Below, piece after piece: positions 4,783 to 55,490 of a DNA stretch of 64,000 nt (the first letter of the stretch is position 1; the number at the start of each line of letters is the position of its first letter). The position numbers were made by a program, and so were the translations under genes. The notes beneath the pieces were generated by a model. That model ran no database searches and was not told where the DNA came from. It saw only the letters and a program-made list of their open reading frames with translations. This DNA is from Octopus bimaculoides (taxonomy: Eukaryota): contig NC_068996.1 in the NCBI RefSeq assembly GCF_001194135.2, positions 49,474,577 through 49,538,576 of the forward strand, written 5' to 3'.

Positions 4783-4873
4783 TGATAGACTTAGAAATGT
4801 GCGTTTCAGCAACCAATGTATTTTAAAAACTGTTACTTCGGTGTATGTAAATGCAAATTTGTTTAATGTATTT
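4783..4873 (+). repeat. Inverted copy of the PLE 5' leader (inverted pLTR-like repeat; partner ~8967-9064)
   Basis: tgatagacttagaaatgtgcgtttcagcaaccaatgtattttaaaaactgttactt...gtaaatgcaaatttgtttaatgtatttgt matches the reverse complement of 8967-9064, apart from a T-run expansion and a few substitutions. Confidence 0.8.
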
Positions 4874-6010
4874 GTCTGCGTGCATGTGTAATGTGTTGAA
4901 AAACAAAACAAAATATCCATTAGCTTAGACGATATTTCGATACAATTACTTTAAACTAGAAGCTAAAAAACATTATTCCTAATTTACACTATTACTTATG
5001 ATAAATCAAAATATCATTAACAGTATTTAATCACTTAAGAAGTTTATTATAAGTCATCCAGCTGCAATCTAGAAACCATAGTTAAATAATAGAATATTAT
5101 TATTATTATTTTATTTTAAAAACCATATTTATGTACATGTAATATTTTAATATTTTCATTATGTATTTGTGTGTGTGTTAATGTGTTGAAAGCTACAAGA
5201 TGATCACGAATCAAAACTGTTTACTAATTATGATAACTGAATATTACATCAACATTTGTGTGCAATATATTTGTTTATGTAATATTGTGAACACATACAC
5301 ACAGGCTTAATTGAGGAAAGCACTAACGTTAGCAAATGAAAATTAATGAAATTAATAAAAATTAAAACCATTATTGAATTAATACGTAATATCTTTAACT
5401 TAAGTTTACCAATTATCTTTTAAAATATATTAATCACAGATTCAGAAGATACATGCTTAAATCAAAATCCTTTTAACCTTTATATAATACAGTTACCCGC
5501 AAATAAAACCTTATGTCAATATTTACCATTTATTTTATATTTTAATATTAATATGATATTTACTAAGAATTATCTAATCTTTATGGTTAAAATTGTTAGT
5601 ATATTAATCCTGAGATACCGTGTAAATTTATAGTCCTGGTAACTTTTATATTGTATATAATGGTAGTTTTTGAAAACATATTTATAGGCATGAACACAGG
5701 ATAACACCCCTTCCTTCTTGTGTTAAGAAGTAGAAGTCTACGTTAGGAATTTAAGATTTGATATAATTCTTCTATGCAAAGAAAACAAAAGGCATTGCCA
5801 ATTTTATAGACATTAGTTCTGCTTATTAATTCCCATTCCACAGTAAGCATTTTATTCTTGTCCTTTAAGTCCCAAATAAATTTACTAAGACTGGTATAAG
5901 ACAACTTATTTTTATTATTAAATGTGTAATTGTTATAAGCAATACATTTTTTGATATAGTTTTGCGTAGCACTGATGTAAAAGAAATTCTTACTTTCAGA
6001 ATCACTGCGG

Positions 6011-6047
<37 letters not shown>

Positions 6048-7541
6048 TAGTTATTAAATCAACAGTTATTTCCATCTTTGCAATCACAATATATATTTTT
6101 CTATTCATATTACTATTGTGATTTATATAATTAGATTCAGTATGATTGTTATTTACAGCGTTACTTCTATTCTTCAGGCTAAGATGGGACTTAAAGTGGG
6201 TTGTTTTCCCTTGTACATTTGAAGAATTATTTAATCATTTTTCACTAACCTTATTTCCTAGAGTATTATTGTTGCATTTAATCGGGTAATTATTTTTATA
6301 AAAATTTAATAATTTCCTTTCATTGAGGAAAGAAATAACCTGAGACATATTCTTCAAAATGGAAAAAGCGAGACAGAGGTAAAATGTTTGGAAAATAGTT
6401 TGTATAAAGATCCGACTAAATTGTTCTTAACTTGTTTAGCGAATGGAATAATGAGCCAAATAATATTATTCTTATCAGAAGGTACATTATAATTTTCAAA
6501 TTTTTTAATCTTACTATATTTATACAGGAATGTCTTTTAATTCTATTATTCCTATTACTAATTTCATGAGTATTATCTGATGTACGATGCAATAAATTGG
6601 TTTACATATTTTGCATAGCATTGTTATCTAAAAGACGTTTATTCTTTTCATTTTTCCTATCCTTATTTCTATTTCTATTAGAGCCTTTAAAATTATAGTT
6701 ACTATGAGTAACTCCTATGTTACTAGAGCCACCATGGTCGACATTTTGTGCATAATACTTTAACTTAAGGCTATACCCAGCTTTGCTGAGGGCCATATTA
6801 TAATAGTCAGCATTTTTGTTAAAAATATCCTTATTAGATGATAAATTAGATATTCTTCTAGAAATATTGTAAACTAAGAAATTTTTTACAGAACTGGGAT
6901 GATTACTTCCAATATTTATATACTTAAGATTGGAGTTAGGCTTGTGGAATGGTTCATAGTTGCCTGTAATGAGGTTTAGGTTAACATCTAGGAAGTTAAC
7001 CAATTCATGTTCATTTTCAATTGTTATGGAATGCCCAAAATTTTTTAAAAACCTTTAAAATTTCTTCTTGTACAGCTCTAATTTTCTACTTGATAGTTTT
7101 CTAATAGTAAAAAGGGCATCATCCCTATATAAACCTCCCACAAGTTCAGGAAAATCCCTTTCTAAGATAAATATAAATACCTGCTAAATGAGTAACTTGG
7201 GTAGAATATGTGGAACCCATAGCAATATTAAAGACATCACAACTATCTTTCTTAATCCAATACTGGTTTTCAAACTCTATAACTGTTTTTCTGGTAGCTA
7301 ATATGACATTAATTTCTCCCTTATTCAGATTCGGGTTGTTTCTCACAAACAAAAGGGCCTTGTTTAAAACTACTTGGTTAATCAAAGAATAATAACTATC
7401 AATATCTATTTGTATAAACTTGTTTCTACTTTTGTATTTAATGCTGTTAAACCAATTTATTACTTTGTGGATATTAGACCAAAGTTGTAACCTTATCTTT
7501 TCCTTAAGGAGCAGTATGTGCTTATCTAAAATAACCTTACT

Positions 7542-7571
7542 TAACCCTAACCCTAACCCTAAGCCTAACCC
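7542..7571 (-). repeat. Interstitial telomere-like (TTAGGG)n tract inside the PLE RT
   Basis: taaccctaaccctaaccctaagcctaaccc. Confidence 0.8.
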
Positions 7572-8226
7572 AAGTCAAATTTTCCTGGGCAAATCAATCT
7601 TACTTTAGGGTTTCCTTAAAAGTTGTCTTTATGATCCTTTAAAATAAACCTAGGTATTTTAGGAACAAAAGTTTCAGATATGTCATCCAAACTGTAATTC
7701 TCCATTATCTGTTTGGATATTAAGTTGGTAGTTCTAAATATTTTTTTTTTTAGTTATTTTGTAACTTTTAGTAATTTCTTTTTTTAATACTTCATGGTAA
7801 TAATTTATTTCCAGATTATACAAATTGCCAGTCTTGTCTGAGTGTACAATTATCCCGTTTTTCCTTTTAAGTTCCGATACAAAAGATTTAAGCTTCCTCA
7901 ATTGCTCATTTCCTCTGTGGGAGTATTTCTTAATTTTAACATTTTTAATAATTTTCCACAGTTCGTCCTCAAAGCTGGCAAGGTGACTATTTGGTGGTGG
8001 GTATTTTTTAGTCCTAAAAACTTTTAATAGTTGATCAGTCTCTTTGGTTTTGCTATTTATCTGTGTATCCATTTTCTTGTCAAAATAAAATGCCTTCCAG
8101 CTGAGTCTATGGATGAATTCAGCTGTTTTATGAATTAGATCCTCTATGTAGGTCCTCAGATGGAAGGCATTTTATTTTGACAAGAAAATGGATTCACAGA
8201 TAAATAGCAAAACCAAAGAGACTGAT

Positions 8227-8807
8227 TTGAAATCAAAATCGAACCAAATTCGACGTCTGGCACCCATGCCAACCTCTCCTTCATTGGACACTAAACTCTG
8301 CTTGCGAAGACCTGTTGGGGCAAGTGAAATTGAAATTGTAATTGAACCATATTCAATGACTGGCACCTGTGCCAGTGAAGCACTAACAGCACCATCTGAG
8401 TGTGATCATTGCCAGAGCAGATGCCTGGCTTCCGTGCTAGTGGCATGTAAATAGCACCTTTTGAGCGTGATCGTTACCAGCGTCGCCTTACTGGCACGTT
8501 AGAAAATTATTTGAGCGGGGTTGTTGCCAGTGCCACTGGACTGGCTCCTGTGCAGGTGGCACATAAAAAACACCATTTTGAGCATGGCCGTTGCCAGTAC
8601 TGTGTGACTGGCCCTCGTGCCAGTGGCATGTAAAAGCACCCACTACACTCTTGGAGTGGTTGGCGTTAGGAAGGGCATCCAGCTGTAGAAACTCTGCCAG
8701 ATCAGATTGGAGCCTGGTGCAGCCGTCCGGTTCACCAGTCCTCAGTCAAATCGTCCAACCTATGCTAGCATAGAAAGCGGACGTTAAACGATGATGATGA
8801 TGATGTA
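8227..8807 (+). mobile_element. RTE-type LINE 3' fragment inserted into the PLE ORF
   Basis: Matches the 3' UTR of the RTE at 20423-21000 and ends in ...GCGGACGTTAAACGATGATGATG. ATGTA lies at both junctions (8146-8150 and 8803-8807), and the PLE frame AEY|IEDL rejoins across the insert. Confidence 0.88.
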
Positions 8808-9065
8808 CTCCGCTTTAGGTGGAATTGGAATGTCCTTCATAGAAATGTCTACTTCAGTTTGCTCCATTTTATTGGTGGAAACAAATACTCATCTACTTCC
8901 GTAGTTGTTTAAATTTAATTAAATCAAGGCCATAAATCAAGGATATGAATTAAGGATATAAATCCACAAATGCATTAAACAAATTTGCATTTACACATAC
9001 ATAAGTAACAGTTTTTAAAATACATTGGTTGTTGAAAGGCACATTTCTAAAAAAAAGTCTATCAT

Positions 9066-13814: not shown

Positions 13815-15131
13815 TCCTTTTGACATAAACAGATGATGCAATTTCAGTCACTGCTTATCATGGTTATAAACAAACAGAAGCAAACACACACACATACATA
13901 CTAGCCATATATGTGTATATTTGCTGTGTGTGTATGTGTATGTGCAGCTATGGCTGTTTGGTTATGAAGTCAGGTTCTGGACCATACAGTTTCTGGTCTT
14001 GTCTTGGTGTTGAACATTTGGCAAGTGTCATCTCCTACAAATCTGATTTAACTGAAAACTTGTAAGTGAATTTGGTGGATGGAAACTGAAAGACAAAGTG
14101 CATCCACGCGTGTGTGTGTGTGTGTCAAAGCTAGCCTTCTGCGTTGTTTCAGTCAAACACTGCTTAGAAAGCATTGGCCAACCTGAAGCAACTCAAGATA
14201 CTGTAGTCAAGACATTTGCTTAAGGTATTGTGCAGTGGGACTATCACAAAACAAACCGGTTTTAGATTGAACCGCTTAACCACATGGCAATATACATTAT
14301 TGATGCACTTAATATATTTAACCTTTTAGCATTTAGATTACTCTGTCAAATGTAATGCACAGGACCTGAAATTTTAGGGGAGGGGTATAGTCAATTACAT
14401 TGGCCCCAGTACTCAACTGGTACTTAATTTATTGACCCCAAAAGGGATGAAAGGCAAAGTTGACCTCAGCAGAATTTGAACTCACAATGTGAAGATGGGG
14501 AAAATGCCACTAAGTATTTTACCTGATGTGCTAATGATTCTCCCACCTCGCCACCTTAATAATAATCATCATCATCATCATCATCATCATCGTTTAACGT
14601 CCGCTTTCCATGCTAGCATGGGTTGGACGATTTGACTGAGGTCTGGTGAAACCAGATGGCTACACCAGGCTCCAATCTAATTTGGCAGAGTTTCTACAGC
14701 TGGTTCAAATTTTGGCACAGTTGGCCTCAACAGAATTTAAACTCAGAATGTAAAGAGTTAGAAGAATTACCATTAAGCATTTAGTATTATTTTAGTAATT
14801 TGAATTATTTATGAATAAAAGTTCTGTGGGACTTTATTGGAACCTTATTTGTTCATACACAACTGTGTATATTACCAATTATCCTGGTGATAAAGCATCA
14901 CAAATGTTAATCATCTAAAGTCAGCAGCAGCAGCAGCAGCAGTAGTAGTATGAGGAACTGCACTGTAATAATGCATCACTGCAACCACCATTTGTTGGTG
15001 ATTCTCTACTTTTCCTAGCAGAGGACACCTCTGCACCACTCACGCAACAACCCTCCAACCCATGGGTCTGTTTGGGTAGTCATTGCTGGTTAAGGGTTTT
15101 ACGAGGTCAGAGTGCAAATCATACTGGAACT

Positions 15132-16068
15132 TCTTTTAATCCCTTTTTACAACACACATTGGGTCTATTCTTTGATATACTGGTCTCCACGGATCACTAG
15201 AACAACATAAAATGAAGTTTAGAAGTAATGCATTTCTAAATCTCTCAGAGAGATTTATGCAGTAGCGATGCGATAAAGTAGTTGTATGCTGTCAACTTAA
15301 TGTGACAGTCCCCTGAAGGGAATAATACTACTGTTGGTTAGCCCTAGGAAGCTGCACCGCTTCCTGTCGGCCTTGACACATTTCCTGTGTACTTATGTTT
15401 GCAAGGGGGAGACAAGCACCTCCACCCAGCTAAGCCTGCATCCAGAGACATGTTTCTGAGTCTTTGCTTGTCATCAGTTCTATTTTTGAAATCAGTGAAT
15501 GTGTTCAATAGAATTATTATATGTTTACGAGAGCTTGACAGGCATCTCCAACTAGCAGGCCATTGCTGCTCCAGACTGATGATGAGCAAAGACTCAGAAA
15601 CATGTCTCTGGATGCAGGCTTAGCTGGGTGGAGGTGCTTGTCTCCCCCTTGTAAACATAAGGACACAGGAAATGTGTCAAGGCCGACAGGAAGCGGTGCA
15701 GCTTCCTAGGTCTAAACAACAGTAGTATTATTCCCTTCAGGGGACTGTCACATTAAGTTGACAGCATACAACTACTTCATCGTATCACTACTGCATAAAT
15801 CTCTCTGAGTGATTTAGAAATGTATTATTTCTAAACTTCATTTTATGTTCTAGTGATCCGTGGAGACCAGTATATCAAAGAATAGACCCAATGTGTGTTG
15901 TAAAAAGGGATTAAAAGAGGTGTGCTTGTCTCCCCCTTGTAAACAAAAGGACACAGGAAATGTGTCAAGGCTGACAGGAAGCGGTGCAGCTTCCTAGGTC
16001 TAACCAACAGTAGTATCATTCCCTTCAGGGGACTGTCACATTAAGTTGACAGCATACAACTACTTCAT
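15132..16068 (+). mobile_element. Fold-back non-autonomous element with a hammerhead ribozyme (PLE pLTR- or retrozyme-like)
   Basis: Inverted arms 15132-15478 and 15575-15918 (12 substitutions plus one 3-bp indel by my count), a 96-bp spacer, and a direct re-copy of 15634-15780 at 15922-16068. The hammerhead sits at the spacer/right-arm junction. Confidence 0.75.
15566..15617 (+). ncRNA. Minimal type I hammerhead ribozyme
   Basis: CTGC-TCCAGA (stem I), CTGATGA core, TGAG-caaaga-CTCA (stem II), GAAAC-AT-GTC (palindromic ACATGT stem III, GUC triplet, predicted cut after 15606), then TCTGGA-t-GCAG (stem I partner). Confidence 0.8.
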
Positions 16069-20131: not shown

Positions 20132-20335
20132 TTATTGATAATGCATTGTATGACTCTTGAGTCCGGTCAAAGATTTACACATTCTATTGCATAATGCACG
20201 ACAGTGCTGGCTGGCAGAGGGAACAGGTACCATAGTATGAATTCTTTTGACATGCTTTTTCAATCCTCCAGCTGAGAGGCACATCTTTCCACATATTGCA
20301 CATGTTCTGTTGTCAACAATAGCCAAATCACAATT
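20132..20335 (-). mobile_element. C-terminal C2H2-finger remnant of a second RTE-type LINE
   Basis: CAICGKMCLSAGGLKKHVKRIH and ALCNRMCKSLTGLKSHTMH followed by a stop. The CKSxxGLKSH pattern resembles RTE ORF ends, and there is no TGEKP linker. Confidence 0.6.
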
Positions 20336-20422
20336 TACACACACGCAAACACACATAAATACACATACACACATGCATATATACACACTTATGCACGTGT
20401 GTGTGTATGCGTGTTTATATAT

Positions 20423-21972
20423 ATCATCATCATCCTTGTCATCGTTTAACGTCCGCTTTCCATGTTGGCATGGGTTGGATGGATTGACTGAGGACTGGTG
20501 AGCCAGATTGGCTGCACCAGGCTCCAATCTGATCTGGCAGTTTCTACAGCTGGGTGCTTTTATGTGCCACCGGCACAAAGGCCAGTCAGGCAGTACTGGC
20601 AATGGCCACGCTCAAATGGTGTTTTTTGCGTGCTACCTGCACAAGAGCCAGTCCAGCAATGACTGGCAACGACCTTACTCGAATGTTTTGTTCACGTGCC
20701 ACCAGCACAAGTGCCAGTAAGGCGACACTGGTAACAATCACGCTCGAATGGTGCTTTTTATGTGCCACCAGCACGGGAGCCAGTCAGCAGCCCTTGCAAC
20801 GATCACGCTTGGATGGTGCCCTTAGTGCTCCTCTAGCACAGATGCCAGTCATGCAGTGCTATCATCAAATTTGATTTCGATTTCACTTGCCTGAATAGGT
20901 CTTCTCAAGCAGAGTTTAGTGTCAAATGAAGGAAAGTGGGATGGTTACACCCACTGGCATAGGCCACAGGTTATGGTCTCACTTGGCATGCCGGGTCTTC
21001 TCAAGCACAGCATATTTCCAAAGGTCTCAGTCACTAGTCATTACCTTGGTGAGGCCTAATGTTCGAAGGTCATGATTCACCACCTCATCCCATGTCTTCC
21101 TGGGTCTACCTCTTCCACAAGTTCCCTCTACTGCTAGGGCGTGACACTTTTTCACACAGCTATCCTCATCTATTCTCACCACATGACCATACCAGTGCAG
21201 TCGTCTCTCCTGCACACCACAACTGATGCTTCTTAGGTCCAACTTTTCTTTCAAGGTACTTACACTGTCAAGTATGCACACTGACATTACTCATCCATCG
21301 GTGCATACTGGCNNNNNNNNNNTGCTTCTTAGGTCCAACTTTTCTTTCAAGGTACTTACACTGTCAAGTATGCACACTGACATTACTCATCCATCGGTGC
21401 ATACTGGCTTCATTCCTTGCAAGCTTACACATGTCCTCAGCAGTCACGGCCCATGTTTCACTGCCATGTAGCATGGCTGTTCGCACATATGCATCGTATA
21501 ATCTACCTTTTACTCTGAGTGAGAGGCCCTTTATCACCAGCAGAGGTAAGTGCTCTCTAAACTTTGCCCAGGCTATTCTTATTCTAGCAGCTACACTTTC
21601 AGAGCACCCACCCCTGCTACTGACTTGGTCACCTAGGTAACAGAAGCTATCAACTACTTCTAGTTTTTCTCCCTGGAATGTGACAGAAGTTGTTCTCTGC
21701 ACATTTTCAGTGTTTATTGCTCCTGAACATCAGTCACATACAAAAACTGACTTCCTAGTTAACCTGCCTTTGATATTGCTGCACCTCTTATGTGTCCATA
21801 GCTTACACTGGATACATCTTATAGAGTTTCTACCTATGCCTTTTCAATAGATCGAGCAGGGCCATCTACCTGAAGGGGTTTGTGGTTTGTTTGCCTTCCT
21901 ACTTATTAAGACTTTGCTTATAGCTAAGTTGACTCTAAGGCCCTTCAATTCTAATCCTTGCTTCCACTTATA
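20423..21972 (-). mobile_element. 5'-truncated RTE-clade LINE (RT C-terminal half + 3' UTR), degenerate
   Basis: Minus translation: KWKQGLELKGLRVNLAISKVLI, a Cys-rich insert, LEVVDSFCYLGDQV...RIRIAWAKFRE...AMLHGSETWAV, RRLHWYGHVVR...GRGRPRKTWDEVV. The 3' UTR has ~65-bp subrepeats and a (GAT)n tail. Confidence 0.92.
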
Positions 21973-22174
21973 TTTTATGAATATTTTTTTTAATATTCAT
22001 ATGTGTCAATATGTATTAATATATGCATACACATTTTAAGTCAAAATTATAAATGTATGAGTATGGTTGCCTAATTTGAGTTTATATCTTAATTACCATA
22101 TATATATATATTATGGAGATGTAGTTGCATAGCAAGTGACCTGATCTAAGATCATGTGCTGGAACGAAAATAAT

Positions 22175-22460
22175 TTGCAGCGTGGAAGGTGTTTATAAGC
22201 CATTTAAGAAACACACAAAAAACATTAGATTCACTTGAACATTTAAATTTAATTTGCCAAAATATTTTCGTCGCTTTGAGACCGCGACCTGTTCACTGAC
22301 AAAATTCCGTGCTGCAGTACAGCATGGAATTTTGTCAGTGAACAGGTCGCGGTCTTAAAGCGATAAAAATATTTTGGCAAATAAAATTTAAATGTTCAAG
22401 TGAATCTAACGGTTTTTGTGTGTTATTTTTAATGGCTTATAAACACCTTCCACACTGCAA
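22175..22460. mobile_element. Palindromic fold-back element carrying a hammerhead in each arm
   Basis: Arms 22175-22314 and 22320-22460 are reverse complements (about 10 differences in 140 bp) around a 5-nt loop, CAGTA. Confidence 0.8.
22253..22303 (-). ncRNA. Minimal type I hammerhead ribozyme, G3:C8 core variant
   Basis: Minus strand: TTTGTCA (stem I), GTGAACA core, G, GTCGC-ggtctcaaa-GCGAC (stem II), GAAA-ATAT-TT (palindromic AATATT stem III, UUU triplet), TGGCAAA (stem I partner, one G:U). The right-arm copy has lost GAAA (gcgataaaa). Confidence 0.65.
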
Positions 22461-23413
22461 TTGTTTATATATATAGCAATNNNNNNNNNNNNNNNNNNNN
22501 NNNNNNNNNNNNNNNNNNNNNNNNNNNNNNNNNNNNNNNNNNNNNNNNNNNNNNNNNNNNNNNNNNNNNNNNNNNNNNNNNNNNNNNNNNNNNNNNNNNN
22601 NNNNNNNNNNNNNNNNNNNNNNNNNNNNNNNNNNNNNNNNNNNNNNNNNNNNNNNNNNNNNNNNNNNNNNNNNNNNNNNNNNNNNNNNNNNNNNNNNNNN
22701 NNNNNNNNNNNNNNNNNNNNNNNNNNNNNNNNNNNNNNNNNNNNNNNNNNNNNNNNNNNNNNNNNNNNNNNNNNNNNNNNNNNNNNNNNNNNNNNNNNNN
22801 NNNNNNNNNNNNNNNNNNNNNNNNNNNNNNNNNNNNNNNNNNNNNNNNNNNNNNNNNNNNNNNNNNNNNNNNNNNNNNNNNNNNNNNNNNNNNNNNNNNN
22901 NNNNNNNNNNNNNNNNNNNNNNNNNNNNNNNNNNNNNNNNNNNNNNNNNNNNNNNNNNNNNNNNNNNNNNNNNNNNNNNNNNNNNNNNNNNNNNNNNNNN
23001 NNNNNNNNNNNNNNNNNNNNNNNNNNNNNNNNNNNNNNNNNNNNNNNNNNNNNNNNNNNNNNNNNNNNNNNNNNNNNNNNNNNNNNNNNNNNNNNNNNNN
23101 NNNNNNNNNNNNNNNNNNNNNNNNNNNNNNNNNNNNNNNNNNNNNNNNNNNNNNNNNNNNNNNNNNNNNNNNNNNNNNNNNNNNNNNNNNNNNNNNNNNN
23201 NNNNNNNNNNNNNNNNNNNNNNNNNNNNNNNNNNNNNNNNNNNNNNNNNNNAGCATGAAACGTGCGTACTGCAATCACCTTTAAAATCCATGTTGCTTAT
23301 TTTGAATTTTTGATCACCTAGTTTTTTGGAATGGTTTTTGTATAATACCATAATACTATATTCTGGTGCCTAAACATAAGTACCATATTCAATCTTGAAT
23401 CTAAATCTAAACC

Positions 23414-55277: not shown

Positions 55278-55490
55278 CCTTTTTGATACCAACCCATCTT
55301 CAGTTCTATGCTACAAACTTCCTGTTTAAAACTGATCTTAATTAAAATCAGCCATCAAAATTTCATGTTAAATCATTTTCCAAAGATAACTTTAATACTG
55401 ACACAGTTAATTTACTAAATTTTTCATTATTTTCACAATTAATCAAAATAAAAGTAGTGCTTTTTTCAAGAAAATATGGTAACAAAAGGA
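55278..55490. mobile_element. piggyBac-like MITE (TTAA target)
   Basis: TTAA-CCTTTTTGATACC...GGTAACAAAAGGA-TTAA; the interior is similar to 41539-41750. Confidence 0.65.

What the first reader, a model, noticed from the sequence alone, without database searches (positions are those of the whole stretch)
22175..22460. Second fold-back family whose hammerhead has a compensatory G3:C8 core
Seen: a 140-bp-arm palindrome with a 5-nt loop. About 11 nt from the turn, the minus strand reads TTTGTCA-GTGAACA-G-GTCGC...GCGAC-GAAA-ATAT-TT-TGGCAAA. The core GUGAACA differs from CUGANGA at exactly positions 3 and 8. Known: C3-G8 is a tertiary Watson-Crick pair, and swapped pairs can retain activity. Inferred: the double change is covariation under selection. 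Standard CTGANGA motif scans would miss this ribozyme. The mirror copy is broken at a CpG (GACG to GATA). Its sequence is unrelated to the 15-kb element but the architecture is the same.
Basis: partly seen in the sequence, partly recalled or inferred. Interest (0 to 1): 0.82.

Follow-up and report, generated by a model that had tools for sequence, protein, structure and literature searches.

The report
Decayed fold-back repeat with swapped-core hammerhead
A 286-base palindrome in what is probably an octopus genome looks like a dead, head-to-head insertion of a Penelope-type retroelement end, and it carries a small hammerhead ribozyme motif whose core C3-G8 pair is swapped to G3-C8; this is a modest new twist on a known kind of element, seen here in only one decaying copy.

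Summary
Arms 22175-22314 and 22320-22460 form a ~92% palindrome around a 5-nt turn. The minus strand 22303->22253 reads as a type-I minimal hammerhead with every invariant core base except C3 and G8, which are G and C. It also has three traits that mark Penelope-like-element (PLE) hammerheads: an unpaired base between A9 and 10.1, a G10.1-C11.1 pair, and a palindromic loop 3 (AUAU). A motif this good occurred in 1 of 3,358 simulated windows. The mirror copy lost C11.1 and G12 at a CpG.

The fold-back sits between two (TA)n runs, with both motifs reading outward. That matches published PLE insertions, which often carry an inverted 5'-truncated copy and prefer (TA)n targets.

Limits:
- There is one copy in the window and none in any searchable collection, so neither a "family" nor "selection" is shown.
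- The arms differ by about 7%, half of it CpG decay, and the ribozyme region is not spared.
- Rfam gives no hammerhead match.
- The dimer helix III is weak (all A-U).
- Natural 3-8 covariation (U3-A8) is already known, and an engineered C3G/G8C double mutant of a PLE hammerhead cleaves partially.

Verdict: a plausible natural G3:C8 variant of a known ribozyme and element type, unproven. Interest is moderate to low.

The parts
22175..22314 (-). Left arm. Read outward on the minus strand, it is one 5'-truncated copy of the ~140-nt 3' end of the source element.
   Evidence: Inverted-repeat pairs I1 and I2, self-BLAST at 91-92%, arm alignment.
22315..22319 (.). 5-nt turn (CAGTA) between the arms, the junction of the two truncated copies.
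22320..22460 (+). Right arm, the second copy, read outward on the plus strand.
22253..22303 (-). Intact minimal type-I hammerhead-like motif with a G3:C8 core.
- Helix I: 22303-22297 pairs with 22259-22253 (7 bp, one G-U).
- Core GUGAACA: 22296-22290, with G3 at 22296 and C8 at 22291.
- Unpaired G: 22289.
- Helix II: 22288-22284 pairs with 22274-22270 (5 bp, G10.1-C11.1).
- Loop II: 22283-22275.
- G12 A13 A14 A15.1: 22269-22266.
- Loop 3 AUAU: 22265-22262.
- U16.1 at 22261 and U17 at 22260.
- Predicted cleavage lies between 22260 and 22259.
   Evidence: Sequence. Descriptor scan. The minimum-free-energy fold forms helices I and II at -13.2 kcal/mol, z = -2.14. Chance estimate.
22331..22381 (+). 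Mirror copy of the motif, inactivated. C11.1 became U (22364) and G12 became A (22365) at a CpG, and there is one loop-II transition (22356).
   Evidence: It fails the descriptor.
22098..22111 (.). Left (TA)n run, the presumed left half of the microsatellite target.
   Evidence: A random interval has (TA)n on both sides with probability about 0.003.
22112..22174 (.). 63 nt of unique sequence between the left (TA)n and the palindrome. It is a possible one-sided PLE 'tail', which is inferred and not shown.
   Evidence: unique within the window. PLE tails of 30-40 bp, often at one end only, are described in PMC8557442.
22466..22475 (.). Right (TA)n run, 5 nt beyond the right arm. A 771-N assembly gap follows at 22481.

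Best explanation
The palindrome is a dead, head-to-head double copy of the last ~140 nt of a hammerhead-bearing retroelement. The source was either a Penelope-like element (PLE) end or a short non-autonomous element mobilised by PLE machinery. It inserted into a (TA)n microsatellite in an octopus-like genome.

Each arm, read outward, is the sense strand and carries a PLE-type minimal type-I hammerhead. The source RNA already had G at core position 3 and C at position 8, so the C3-G8 Watson-Crick pair of the active site is kept in swapped form.

In the source element's transcript the motif would have cut after U17. It most likely worked as a dimer, through the self-complementary A15.1-AUAU-U16.1 stretch, or with help from the element's protein, and it would have trimmed the retroelement RNA at a reduced rate.

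The near-perfect symmetry of the two arms suggests the reverse transcriptase snapped back onto its own cDNA. Alternatively both target strands were primed.

At this locus nothing is functional. The right copy lost G12, both arms decay at CpGs, and any read-through transcript would fold into a 140-bp hairpin that buries the ribozyme.

Shown: the anatomy, the improbability by chance, the decay, and the (TA)n flanks. Inferred: PLE origin, catalysis, the dimer mode, and the snap-back mechanism.
For: - All invariant hammerhead positions except 3 and 8 are present, in type-I order.
- The three PLE-specific traits are present: an unpaired base between 9 and 10.1, G10.1-C11.1, and a palindromic loop 3.
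- A motif this good occurred in 1 of 3,358 simulated windows.
- Helices I and II form in the minimum-free-energy fold of the motif alone and of the whole arm.
- Both arms share G3 and C8.
- If two random core hits were responsible, they would have to fall on exactly these two positions and stay complementary. My estimate of that is about 1 in 700.
- The C3G/G8C double mutant of the Anolis Poseidon PLE hammerhead partially restores cleavage (PMC11167929).
- PLE insertions often have an inverted 5'-truncated copy abutting the 5' end, a one-sided tail, and (TA)n targets (PMC8557442). Dual minimal hammerheads 100-700 bp apart on opposite strands were seen in Schistosoma.
- (TA)n lies on both sides, with chance about 0.003.
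- The same window holds a second hammerhead-bearing inverted/tandem element and degenerate PLE-like reading frames.
- The best protein relatives of a neighbouring LINE fragment are from Octopus bimaculoides. Octopus genomes carry PLEs (PMC13282606).
Against: - There is only one locus: none elsewhere in the window, and none in metagenome contigs, viral contigs or the protein collection.
- No PLE reading frame is adjacent, and no sequence similarity links it to the PLE-like remnant at 5.7-8.1 kb.
- Rfam gives no hammerhead match even at E<=10.
- The dimer helix III is all A-U, about -2 kcal/mol against -6 for the 15-kb motif.
- G3 can wobble-pair with U17 in the predicted fold. This resembles the C3-G17 trap discussed in PMC3884650.
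- Helix II is 5 bp, shorter than the 6-8 bp described for PLE minimal hammerheads.
- The candidate 'tail' is 63 nt, not 30-40.
- The motif is no better conserved than the rest of the arms.
- PLE minimal hammerheads cleave poorly in vitro even with canonical cores.
Confidence: 0.55

Rival explanations
1. Chance look-alike. The palindrome is a fold-back DNA transposon (MITE) or a local inverted duplication, and its resemblance to a hammerhead is accidental.
For: - The element is entirely palindromic with a tiny loop, as fold-back MITEs are.
- There is no adjacent retroelement gene.
- Rfam sees no hammerhead.
- About 5% of simulated windows contain some motif with a Watson-Crick 3-8 pair under a relaxed descriptor.
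- A genome of gigabase size would hold some chance hits.
Against: - The full feature set occurred in 0.03% of simulated windows.
- I found no convincing target-site duplication at any boundary choice, reading the flanks.
- The outward sense orientation and the (TA)n flanks fit PLE insertions.
- A second, unrelated hammerhead fold-back lies 7 kb away.
Confidence: 0.2
2. The motif is derived from a real hammerhead but was already a crippled pseudo-ribozyme. G3 and C8 arose in a non-functional lineage, or the hammerhead is dispensable, so the swap was never selected.
For: - In vitro, PLE insertion does not need hammerhead cleavage, and no reads end at the cleavage site in Anolis RNA-seq (PMC11167929).
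- Some very successful PLE clades lack canonical hammerheads (PMC8557442).
- The helix III palindrome is weak.
- A G3-U17 wobble is possible.
Against: - Two transversions that hit exactly the two paired core positions and restore complementarity are unlikely without selection.
- All 11 other invariant bases and both helices are intact in the left arm.
Confidence: 0.15
3. The relevant feature is the long hairpin itself. If transcribed, the 140-bp duplex would feed small-RNA or RNA-editing pathways, and the ribozyme-like motif is irrelevant.
For: - The predicted hairpin is -205 kcal/mol.
- Rfam long-hairpin microRNA models match weakly: MIR8562 at 80.5 bits and MIR6140 at 76.3 bits.
Against: - Those scores are far below the gathering thresholds (211 and 140) and come from plant families. 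They reflect a generic hairpin shape.
- The arms are diverging through uncompensated changes.
- There is no expression evidence.
Confidence: 0.06
4. Assembly artefact. The palindrome is a false inverted join next to the 771-N gap.
For: - The right arm ends 20 nt before a gap.
- PLE-type inverted structures are known to trouble short-read assemblies.
Against: Artefactual inverted joins are normally identical copies. Here the arms differ at 10 sites plus an indel, five of them CpG transitions.
Confidence: 0.03

Closest known systems
Minimal type-I hammerheads of Penelope-like elements (Cervera and de la Pena 2014, PMC4209133)
   Same: - Type-I order of helices.
- Helix III reduced to A15.1-U16.1 with a palindromic loop.
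- An unpaired base between A9 and 10.1, and a G10.1-C11.1 pair.
- No defined loop 1.
- Occurrence as dispersed single or paired opposite-strand motifs.
- A precedent for covariation at core positions 3 and 8 (U3-A8, about 1,300 hits in Schistosoma mansoni).
   Different: - The 3-8 pair is G-C rather than C-G or U-A.
- Helix I is longer (7 bp against 4-5) and helix II shorter (5 bp against 6-8).
- There is no adjacent PLE reading frame.
- Only one locus is available.
Engineered C3G/G8C double mutants (Martick and Scott 2006, as cited in PMC11167929; Anolis Poseidon PLE hammerhead in that paper)
   Same: Same swapped core pair, in one case in a genuine PLE hammerhead, with partial rescue of cleavage.
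   Different: - Those are laboratory mutants, whereas this would be a natural sequence.
- The Poseidon ribozyme cleaved only when the PLE protein was present.
- Nothing is known about the activity of the octopus motif.
PLE insertion structures with an inverted 5'-truncated copy, a tail and (TA)n targets (Craig et al. 2021, PMC8557442)
   Same: - Head-to-head inverted copies reading outward to a common 3' end.
- Extra sequence on one side only.
- (TA)n on both sides.
   Different: - Both copies are truncated at almost the same point, giving a hairpin-like palindrome with no full-length unit attached.
- The candidate tail is 63 nt rather than 30-40.
- The (TA)n preference is documented for the Naiad and Neptune clades, and Naiads lack canonical hammerheads.
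The 15-kb element of the same window (15129-16068), a retrozyme- or pLTR-like repeat with an HH9-like hammerhead
   Same: - Inverted arms with the hammerhead near the inner end, reading outward.
- Helix III of one base pair with a palindromic loop (CAUG).
   Different: - Unrelated sequence.
- Canonical CUGAUGA core.
- 4-bp helix II with loop CAAAGA.
- Rfam HH9 match of 25.9 bits.
- ~350-nt arms, a 96-nt spacer, unequal truncation and a trailing direct partial copy at 288-nt spacing.

Membership tests
Hammerhead ribozyme (Rfam clan CL00010, type I) | Three helices around a junction in the order helix I 5' strand, core, helix II hairpin, GAAA, helix III, H17, helix I 3' strand | tested here: met
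   Helix I is 7 bp and helix II is 5 bp. Helix III is a single A-U pair plus loop AUAU. Helices I and II form in the minimum-free-energy fold.
Hammerhead ribozyme (Rfam clan CL00010, type I) | Invariant core C3 U4 G5 A6 N7 G8 A9 ... G12 A13 A14 A15.1 ... U16.1 H17 | tested here: not met
   Eleven of the 13 core positions match, counting N7 and H17 among them. C3 is G (22296) and G8 is C (22291). The two changes keep Watson-Crick complementarity.
Hammerhead ribozyme (Rfam clan CL00010, type I) | Match to an Rfam hammerhead covariance model | tested here: not met
   No hammerhead hit at gathering score, and none at E<=10 on 481-nt or 82-nt slices. As a positive control, the 15-kb hammerhead scores 25.9 bits against HH9, E = 6e-5, which is itself below the gathering score of 52.
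Hammerhead ribozyme (Rfam clan CL00010, type I) | Site-specific self-cleavage after position 17 | not testable with these tools
   This needs in vitro transcription and cleavage assays. The only indirect support is the partial activity of C3G/G8C mutants in the literature.
PLE-type minimal hammerhead (Cervera and de la Pena 2014) | [quoted passage not shown] | tested here: met
   G at 22289. The feature is listed in PMC4209133.
PLE-type minimal hammerhead (Cervera and de la Pena 2014) | Conserved G10.1-C11.1 pair | tested here: met
   G at 22288 pairs with C at 22270 in the left arm. In the right arm C11.1 decayed to U.
PLE-type minimal hammerhead (Cervera and de la Pena 2014) | Palindromic positions 15.2-16.2 or loop 3, allowing a dimeric helix III | tested here: met
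   A-AUAU-U is self-complementary, but the duplex is weak at about -2 kcal/mol.
PLE-type minimal hammerhead (Cervera and de la Pena 2014) | Location in the terminal repeat of an element encoding reverse transcriptase and a GIY-YIG endonuclease | tested here: not met
   No such reading frame adjoins the palindrome. The PLE-like frames at 5.7-8.1 kb are unrelated in sequence. The paper notes that most motifs occur as isolated copies of truncated PLEs.
PLE-type minimal hammerhead (Cervera and de la Pena 2014) | Many genomic copies forming consensus families with compensatory changes in the helices | not testable with these tools
   There is one locus in the window, the host genome is not searchable here, and pattern and protein searches elsewhere found nothing related.
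PLE insertion architecture (Craig et al. 2021) | An inverted 5'-truncated copy abutting the 5' end, with both copies running to the element's 3' end | tested here: met
   The arms read outward in the hammerhead sense orientation and end at the same sequence...CCACRCTGCAA.
PLE insertion architecture (Craig et al. 2021) | Microsatellite, often (TA)n, target and a 30-40 bp tail at one end | tested here: inconclusive
   (TA)n lies on both sides, with chance about 0.003. However, the one-sided extra sequence is 63 nt long and its origin is unknown.
MITE or fold-back DNA transposon | Terminal inverted repeats flanked by a target-site duplication, with many uniform copies | tested here: inconclusive
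   The inverted repeats are present, but I found no convincing duplication at any boundary choice (at best ATT/ATT in AT-rich flanks). Copy uniformity is not testable, since there is a single copy.
MicroRNA or hairpin RNA gene | Match to a curated precursor family at its gathering score | tested here: not met
   MIR8562 scores 80.5 against a threshold of 211 and MIR6140 scores 76.3 against 140. Both are plant families matched as a generic long hairpin.

The most novel reading that the evidence does not exclude
Octopus genomes harbour a lineage of PLE-associated or retrozyme-like hammerheads fixed for a G3:C8 core. The U at position 17 would avoid the strong G3-C17 mispairing trap. Such ribozymes would be active but invisible to every CUGANGA-based descriptor and to Rfam. 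In its strongest form, swapped-core motifs of this kind would be the 'missing' ribozymes of (TA)n-targeting PLE clades that are reported to lack canonical hammerheads.
Probability: 0.2. Interest if true: 0.6.

Novelty: new variant of a known kind. Interest (0 to 1): 0.38.

Why it matters
If a whole family proves to be fixed for G3:C8 and cleaves, it would be the first natural example of the fully swapped 3-8 pair. Only U3-A8 was reported as natural in the papers I could read. It would also give in vivo evolutionary support for the tertiary C3-G8 pair of the active hammerhead structure.

It would show that hammerhead censuses built on the CUGANGA box, and Rfam models, undercount ribozymes in retroelement-rich invertebrate genomes.

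As it stands, it is a single decayed copy. It mainly illustrates known PLE insertion anatomy in an octopus-like genome.

Tried and rejected
- **Rfam.** I searched the whole window at gathering score and at E<=10, and small slices too. There was no hammerhead at 22 kb. The only hits there were generic long-hairpin matches to plant microRNA families far below threshold, which I rejected as meaningless.
- **More copies in the window.** BLAST with word size 7 found none. The flanks are also unique.
- **More copies elsewhere.**
  - An exact 18-mer in viral contigs gave 0 hits.
  - A degenerate pattern that left positions 3, 7, 8 and 9 free gave 109 metagenome and 5 viral matches. BLAST against the fetched loci gave only two 30-nt chance-level matches to the arm.
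  - The 43-aa reading frame across the palindrome has no relative among 5.8 billion proteins.
- **Reaching the host genome.** The window's LINE reading frame is not on record as a called gene. Long ENA contigs carrying a 52%-identical LINE protein belong to a different organism, with GC 33%, CpG observed/expected 0.27, and only a 52-nt match at ~82% identity to the window.
- **Target-site duplication** for hAT, Tc1/mariner or PIF-type ends. None was convincing.
- **A canonical-core reading** in another register or on the other strand. None exists.
- **Hammerheads in the PLE-like remnant at 4.8-9.05 kb.** Even a descriptor relaxed to 3-bp stems found none.
- **Literature.** Supplements of the two key PLE papers are not held. 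Lunse et al. 2017, which may list further core variants, is not held either.

Full report
**What is there**

The window is AT-rich (GC 37.7%) and CpG-depleted (observed/expected 0.42). It is a gap-ridden draft assembly. A LINE reverse-transcriptase fragment just upstream of the finding (21364-21702, minus strand) has its best named relatives in Octopus bimaculoides, at 71% and 87% identity. The host is therefore most likely that octopus or a close relative.

At 22175-22460 there is a genuine palindrome. The arms are 22175-22314 and 22320-22460, around a 5-nt turn CAGTA. Aligned to each other, the arms differ at 10 positions plus one indel. Five of the ten substitutions are CpG to TpG or CpA changes. 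These differences argue against an assembly artefact and for an old insertion that is decaying neutrally. On the octopus time scale given in PMC13282606, the roughly 3.7% per-arm divergence would be about 10 million years. That figure is my extrapolation.

**The motif**

Read on the minus strand from 22303 to 22253, the left arm gives: UUUGUCA | GUGAACA | G | GUCGC GGUCUCAAA GCGAC | GAAA | AUAU | U U | UGGCAAA. This is the type-I hammerhead order.
- Helix I has 7 bp, one of them G-U.
- The core has U4 G5 A6 A9 G12 A13 A14 A15.1 U16.1 U17 all in place.
- Helix II has 5 bp and starts with G10.1-C11.1.
- Only positions 3 and 8 depart from consensus. They are G and C instead of C and G.

The isolated 51-mer and the whole arm both fold with helices I and II in the minimum-free-energy structure (-13.2 kcal/mol, z = -2.14).

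The right-arm copy (22331-22381) reads GCGAU-AAAA instead of GCGAC-GAAA.

**Is it more than chance?**

I wrote a relaxed descriptor with these rules:
- any base at positions 3, 7 and 8;
- an optional unpaired base after A9;
- helix II of at least 4 bp and helix I of at least 5 bp;
- loop 3 of 0-8 nt.

In the real window it returns three hits: the canonical hammerhead at 15570-15612, this motif, and an AT-rich hit at 55411-55452 whose positions 3 and 8 cannot pair. Relaxing both stems to 3 bp adds only one weak A3:U8 hit, at 21009-21045.

The results for 3,358 first-order Markov simulations of the window were:

| Feature set | Simulated windows with a hit |
|---|---|
| Any motif with a Watson-Crick 3-8 pair | 5.4% |
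| Plus a palindromic loop 3 (empty loop counted) | 0.57% |
| With a non-empty palindromic loop 3 | 0.09% |
| As good as observed | 0.03% (1 window) |

A Markov model underestimates real-genome oddities, so I take the chance probability as roughly one in a thousand, not as an exact value.

**Why it looks like a Penelope-type hammerhead**

Cervera and de la Pena (PMC4209133) list features that emerged from PLE minimal hammerheads without being part of their search descriptor. [quoted passage not shown] All three are present here.

The same paper reports pairs of minimal hammerheads 100-700 bp apart on opposite strands, and a natural core covariation, U3-A8, in about 1,300 Schistosoma motifs. Perreault et al. 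had already seen U3-A8 in other natural hammerheads (PMC3088659).

Craig et al. (PMC8557442) describe PLE insertions as heavily 5'-truncated. They often have an inverted 5'-truncated copy at the 5' end, a 30-40 bp tail at one end only, and a bias for microsatellite targets, (TA)n in some clades.

Here both arms read outward in the ribozyme's sense orientation and end at the same sequence. (TA)n runs lie on both sides (22098-22111 and 22466-22475), which a random interval in this window shows with probability about 0.003. On the left side only, 63 nt of unique sequence separates the (TA)n from the palindrome.

The window also contains a second hammerhead-bearing inverted/tandem element at 15129-16068. 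Its ribozyme matches Rfam HH9 at 25.9 bits. Degenerate PLE-like reading frames lie at 5.7-8.1 kb.

**Could a G3:C8 core work?**

In the Anolis Poseidon PLE, the single mutants C3G and G8C abolish hammerhead cleavage, and the double mutant partly restores it (PMC11167929). This agrees with the C3-G8 pair of the full-length crystal structure, which that paper cites. So partial activity is plausible.

Several points argue against strong activity:
- The self-complementary helix III stretch is all A-U, about -2 kcal/mol against -6 for the 15-kb motif.
- The predicted fold extends helix I with a G3-U17 wobble. This recalls the inactive C3-G17 trap discussed by the Hammann group, who noted that a G3-C8 variant was more active with G17 than with the natural C17 (PMC3884650). 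A U at position 17 is at least a weaker trap than C would be.
- PLE minimal hammerheads cleave poorly in vitro even with a normal core.
- The Poseidon ribozyme needed its protein.

**What is not shown**

- There is no second copy in the window.
- None turned up in viral or metagenome contigs or through the protein collection.
- I could not reach the host genome.
- The two arms descend from one insertion, so their shared G3 and C8 is one observation, not two.
- At this locus the motif is not protected. It has 3 differences in 51 nt, against 7 plus an indel in the remaining 89 nt.
- A transcript through both arms would form a -205 kcal/mol hairpin that hides the ribozyme.
- Rfam does not recognise the motif at any threshold.

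The argument for selection is indirect. Two transversions landing on exactly the two paired core positions and restoring complementarity, while every other invariant base and both helices stay intact, would be very unlikely in a drifting pseudo-ribozyme.

**Mechanism I commit to**

A hammerhead-bearing PLE end, or a PLE-mobilised short element, was reverse-transcribed at a nicked (TA)n site. About 140 nt in, the enzyme switched onto its own product, or the second target strand was primed as well. That produced two outward-facing copies joined head to head.

The near-identical truncation point of the two arms favours the snap-back version. The 15-kb element, with a 96-nt spacer and unequal truncation, looks more like two separate copies.

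The ribozyme belonged to the source RNA, where it would have trimmed the transcript after U17. The inserted copy is a fossil. I give this 0.55. The rivals are:
- a chance look-alike in a fold-back DNA element, 0.2;
- a real but unselected, crippled core, 0.15;
- a hairpin-RNA locus, 0.06;
- an assembly artefact, 0.03.

**Verdict**

This is a plausible natural G3:C8 variant of a known ribozyme in a known kind of retroelement scar. Natural covariation at these positions and the activity of the engineered swap are already published. The evidence here is a single decaying copy, so interest is moderate to low (0.38). The decisive test, a genome-wide consensus in octopus assemblies followed by cleavage assays with revertants, is easy to run but outside these tools.

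Noticed in passing
window 15129-16068: Complex hammerhead-bearing repeat. Inverted arms 15129-15478 and 15575-15921 are 96-99% complementary with a 96-nt spacer. A 5'-truncated direct copy follows at 15922-16068, at 288-nt spacing. The hammerhead at 15555-15629 (+) has a canonical CUGAUGA core and matches Rfam HH9 at 25.9 bits, below the gathering score of 52. The left-arm mirror copy is truncated inside the ribozyme and lacks the 5' strand of helix I. It looks like a retrozyme or PLE terminal-repeat arrangement.
   Followed up: partly
window 4791-9050: Degenerate PLE-like reading frames on the minus strand: a DKTG-motif N-terminal region at 7734-8072, reverse-transcriptase-like pieces at 7146-7385 and 6602-7003, and a possible C-terminal endonuclease piece at 5743-6108. 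They are bounded by 85-nt inverted repeats (4791-4875 and 8966-9050, 92%). The 5' end is duplicated head to head (8034-8105 and 8155-8226, 97%). Pfam gave no significant hit, and my descriptor found no hammerhead.
   Followed up: partly
window 21364-21702 (-): LINE reverse-transcriptase C-terminal fragment. The best named relatives are Octopus bimaculoides proteins at 71% and 87% identity, which points to the host organism. A C2H2 zinc-finger-like reading frame lies at 20132-20602 (-).
   Followed up: partly
window about 1.8-2.4 kb, 2.9 kb, 9.1 kb, 17.3 kb, 51 kb, 59.9 kb: Recurring peptide strings in mechanical reading frames (for example SGCVVSSLLTNHMVPGSVPLRG and ARGYSRRHL.EVPRSGTEPGTMWLVSKLLTTQPL) indicate many copies of a repeat, possibly a tRNA-derived SINE. 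Several assembly gaps are flanked by (TA)n.
   Followed up: no
window 21009-21045 (-) and 55411-55452 (-): Two weak descriptor hits. The first has A3:U8 with 3- and 4-bp stems. The second is AT-rich with non-pairing U3 and U8. Both are probably chance and are useful as a picture of the false-positive background.
   Followed up: partly
L115-L117 (ENA long-read metagenome assemblies ERZ25067570, ERZ25878469, ERZ25067561): Megabase-scale contigs in 'metagenome' assemblies carry LINE genes 52% identical to the window's fragment. With GC 33% and CpG observed/expected 0.27, they are evidently host DNA of some other animal, not microbes.
   Followed up: no
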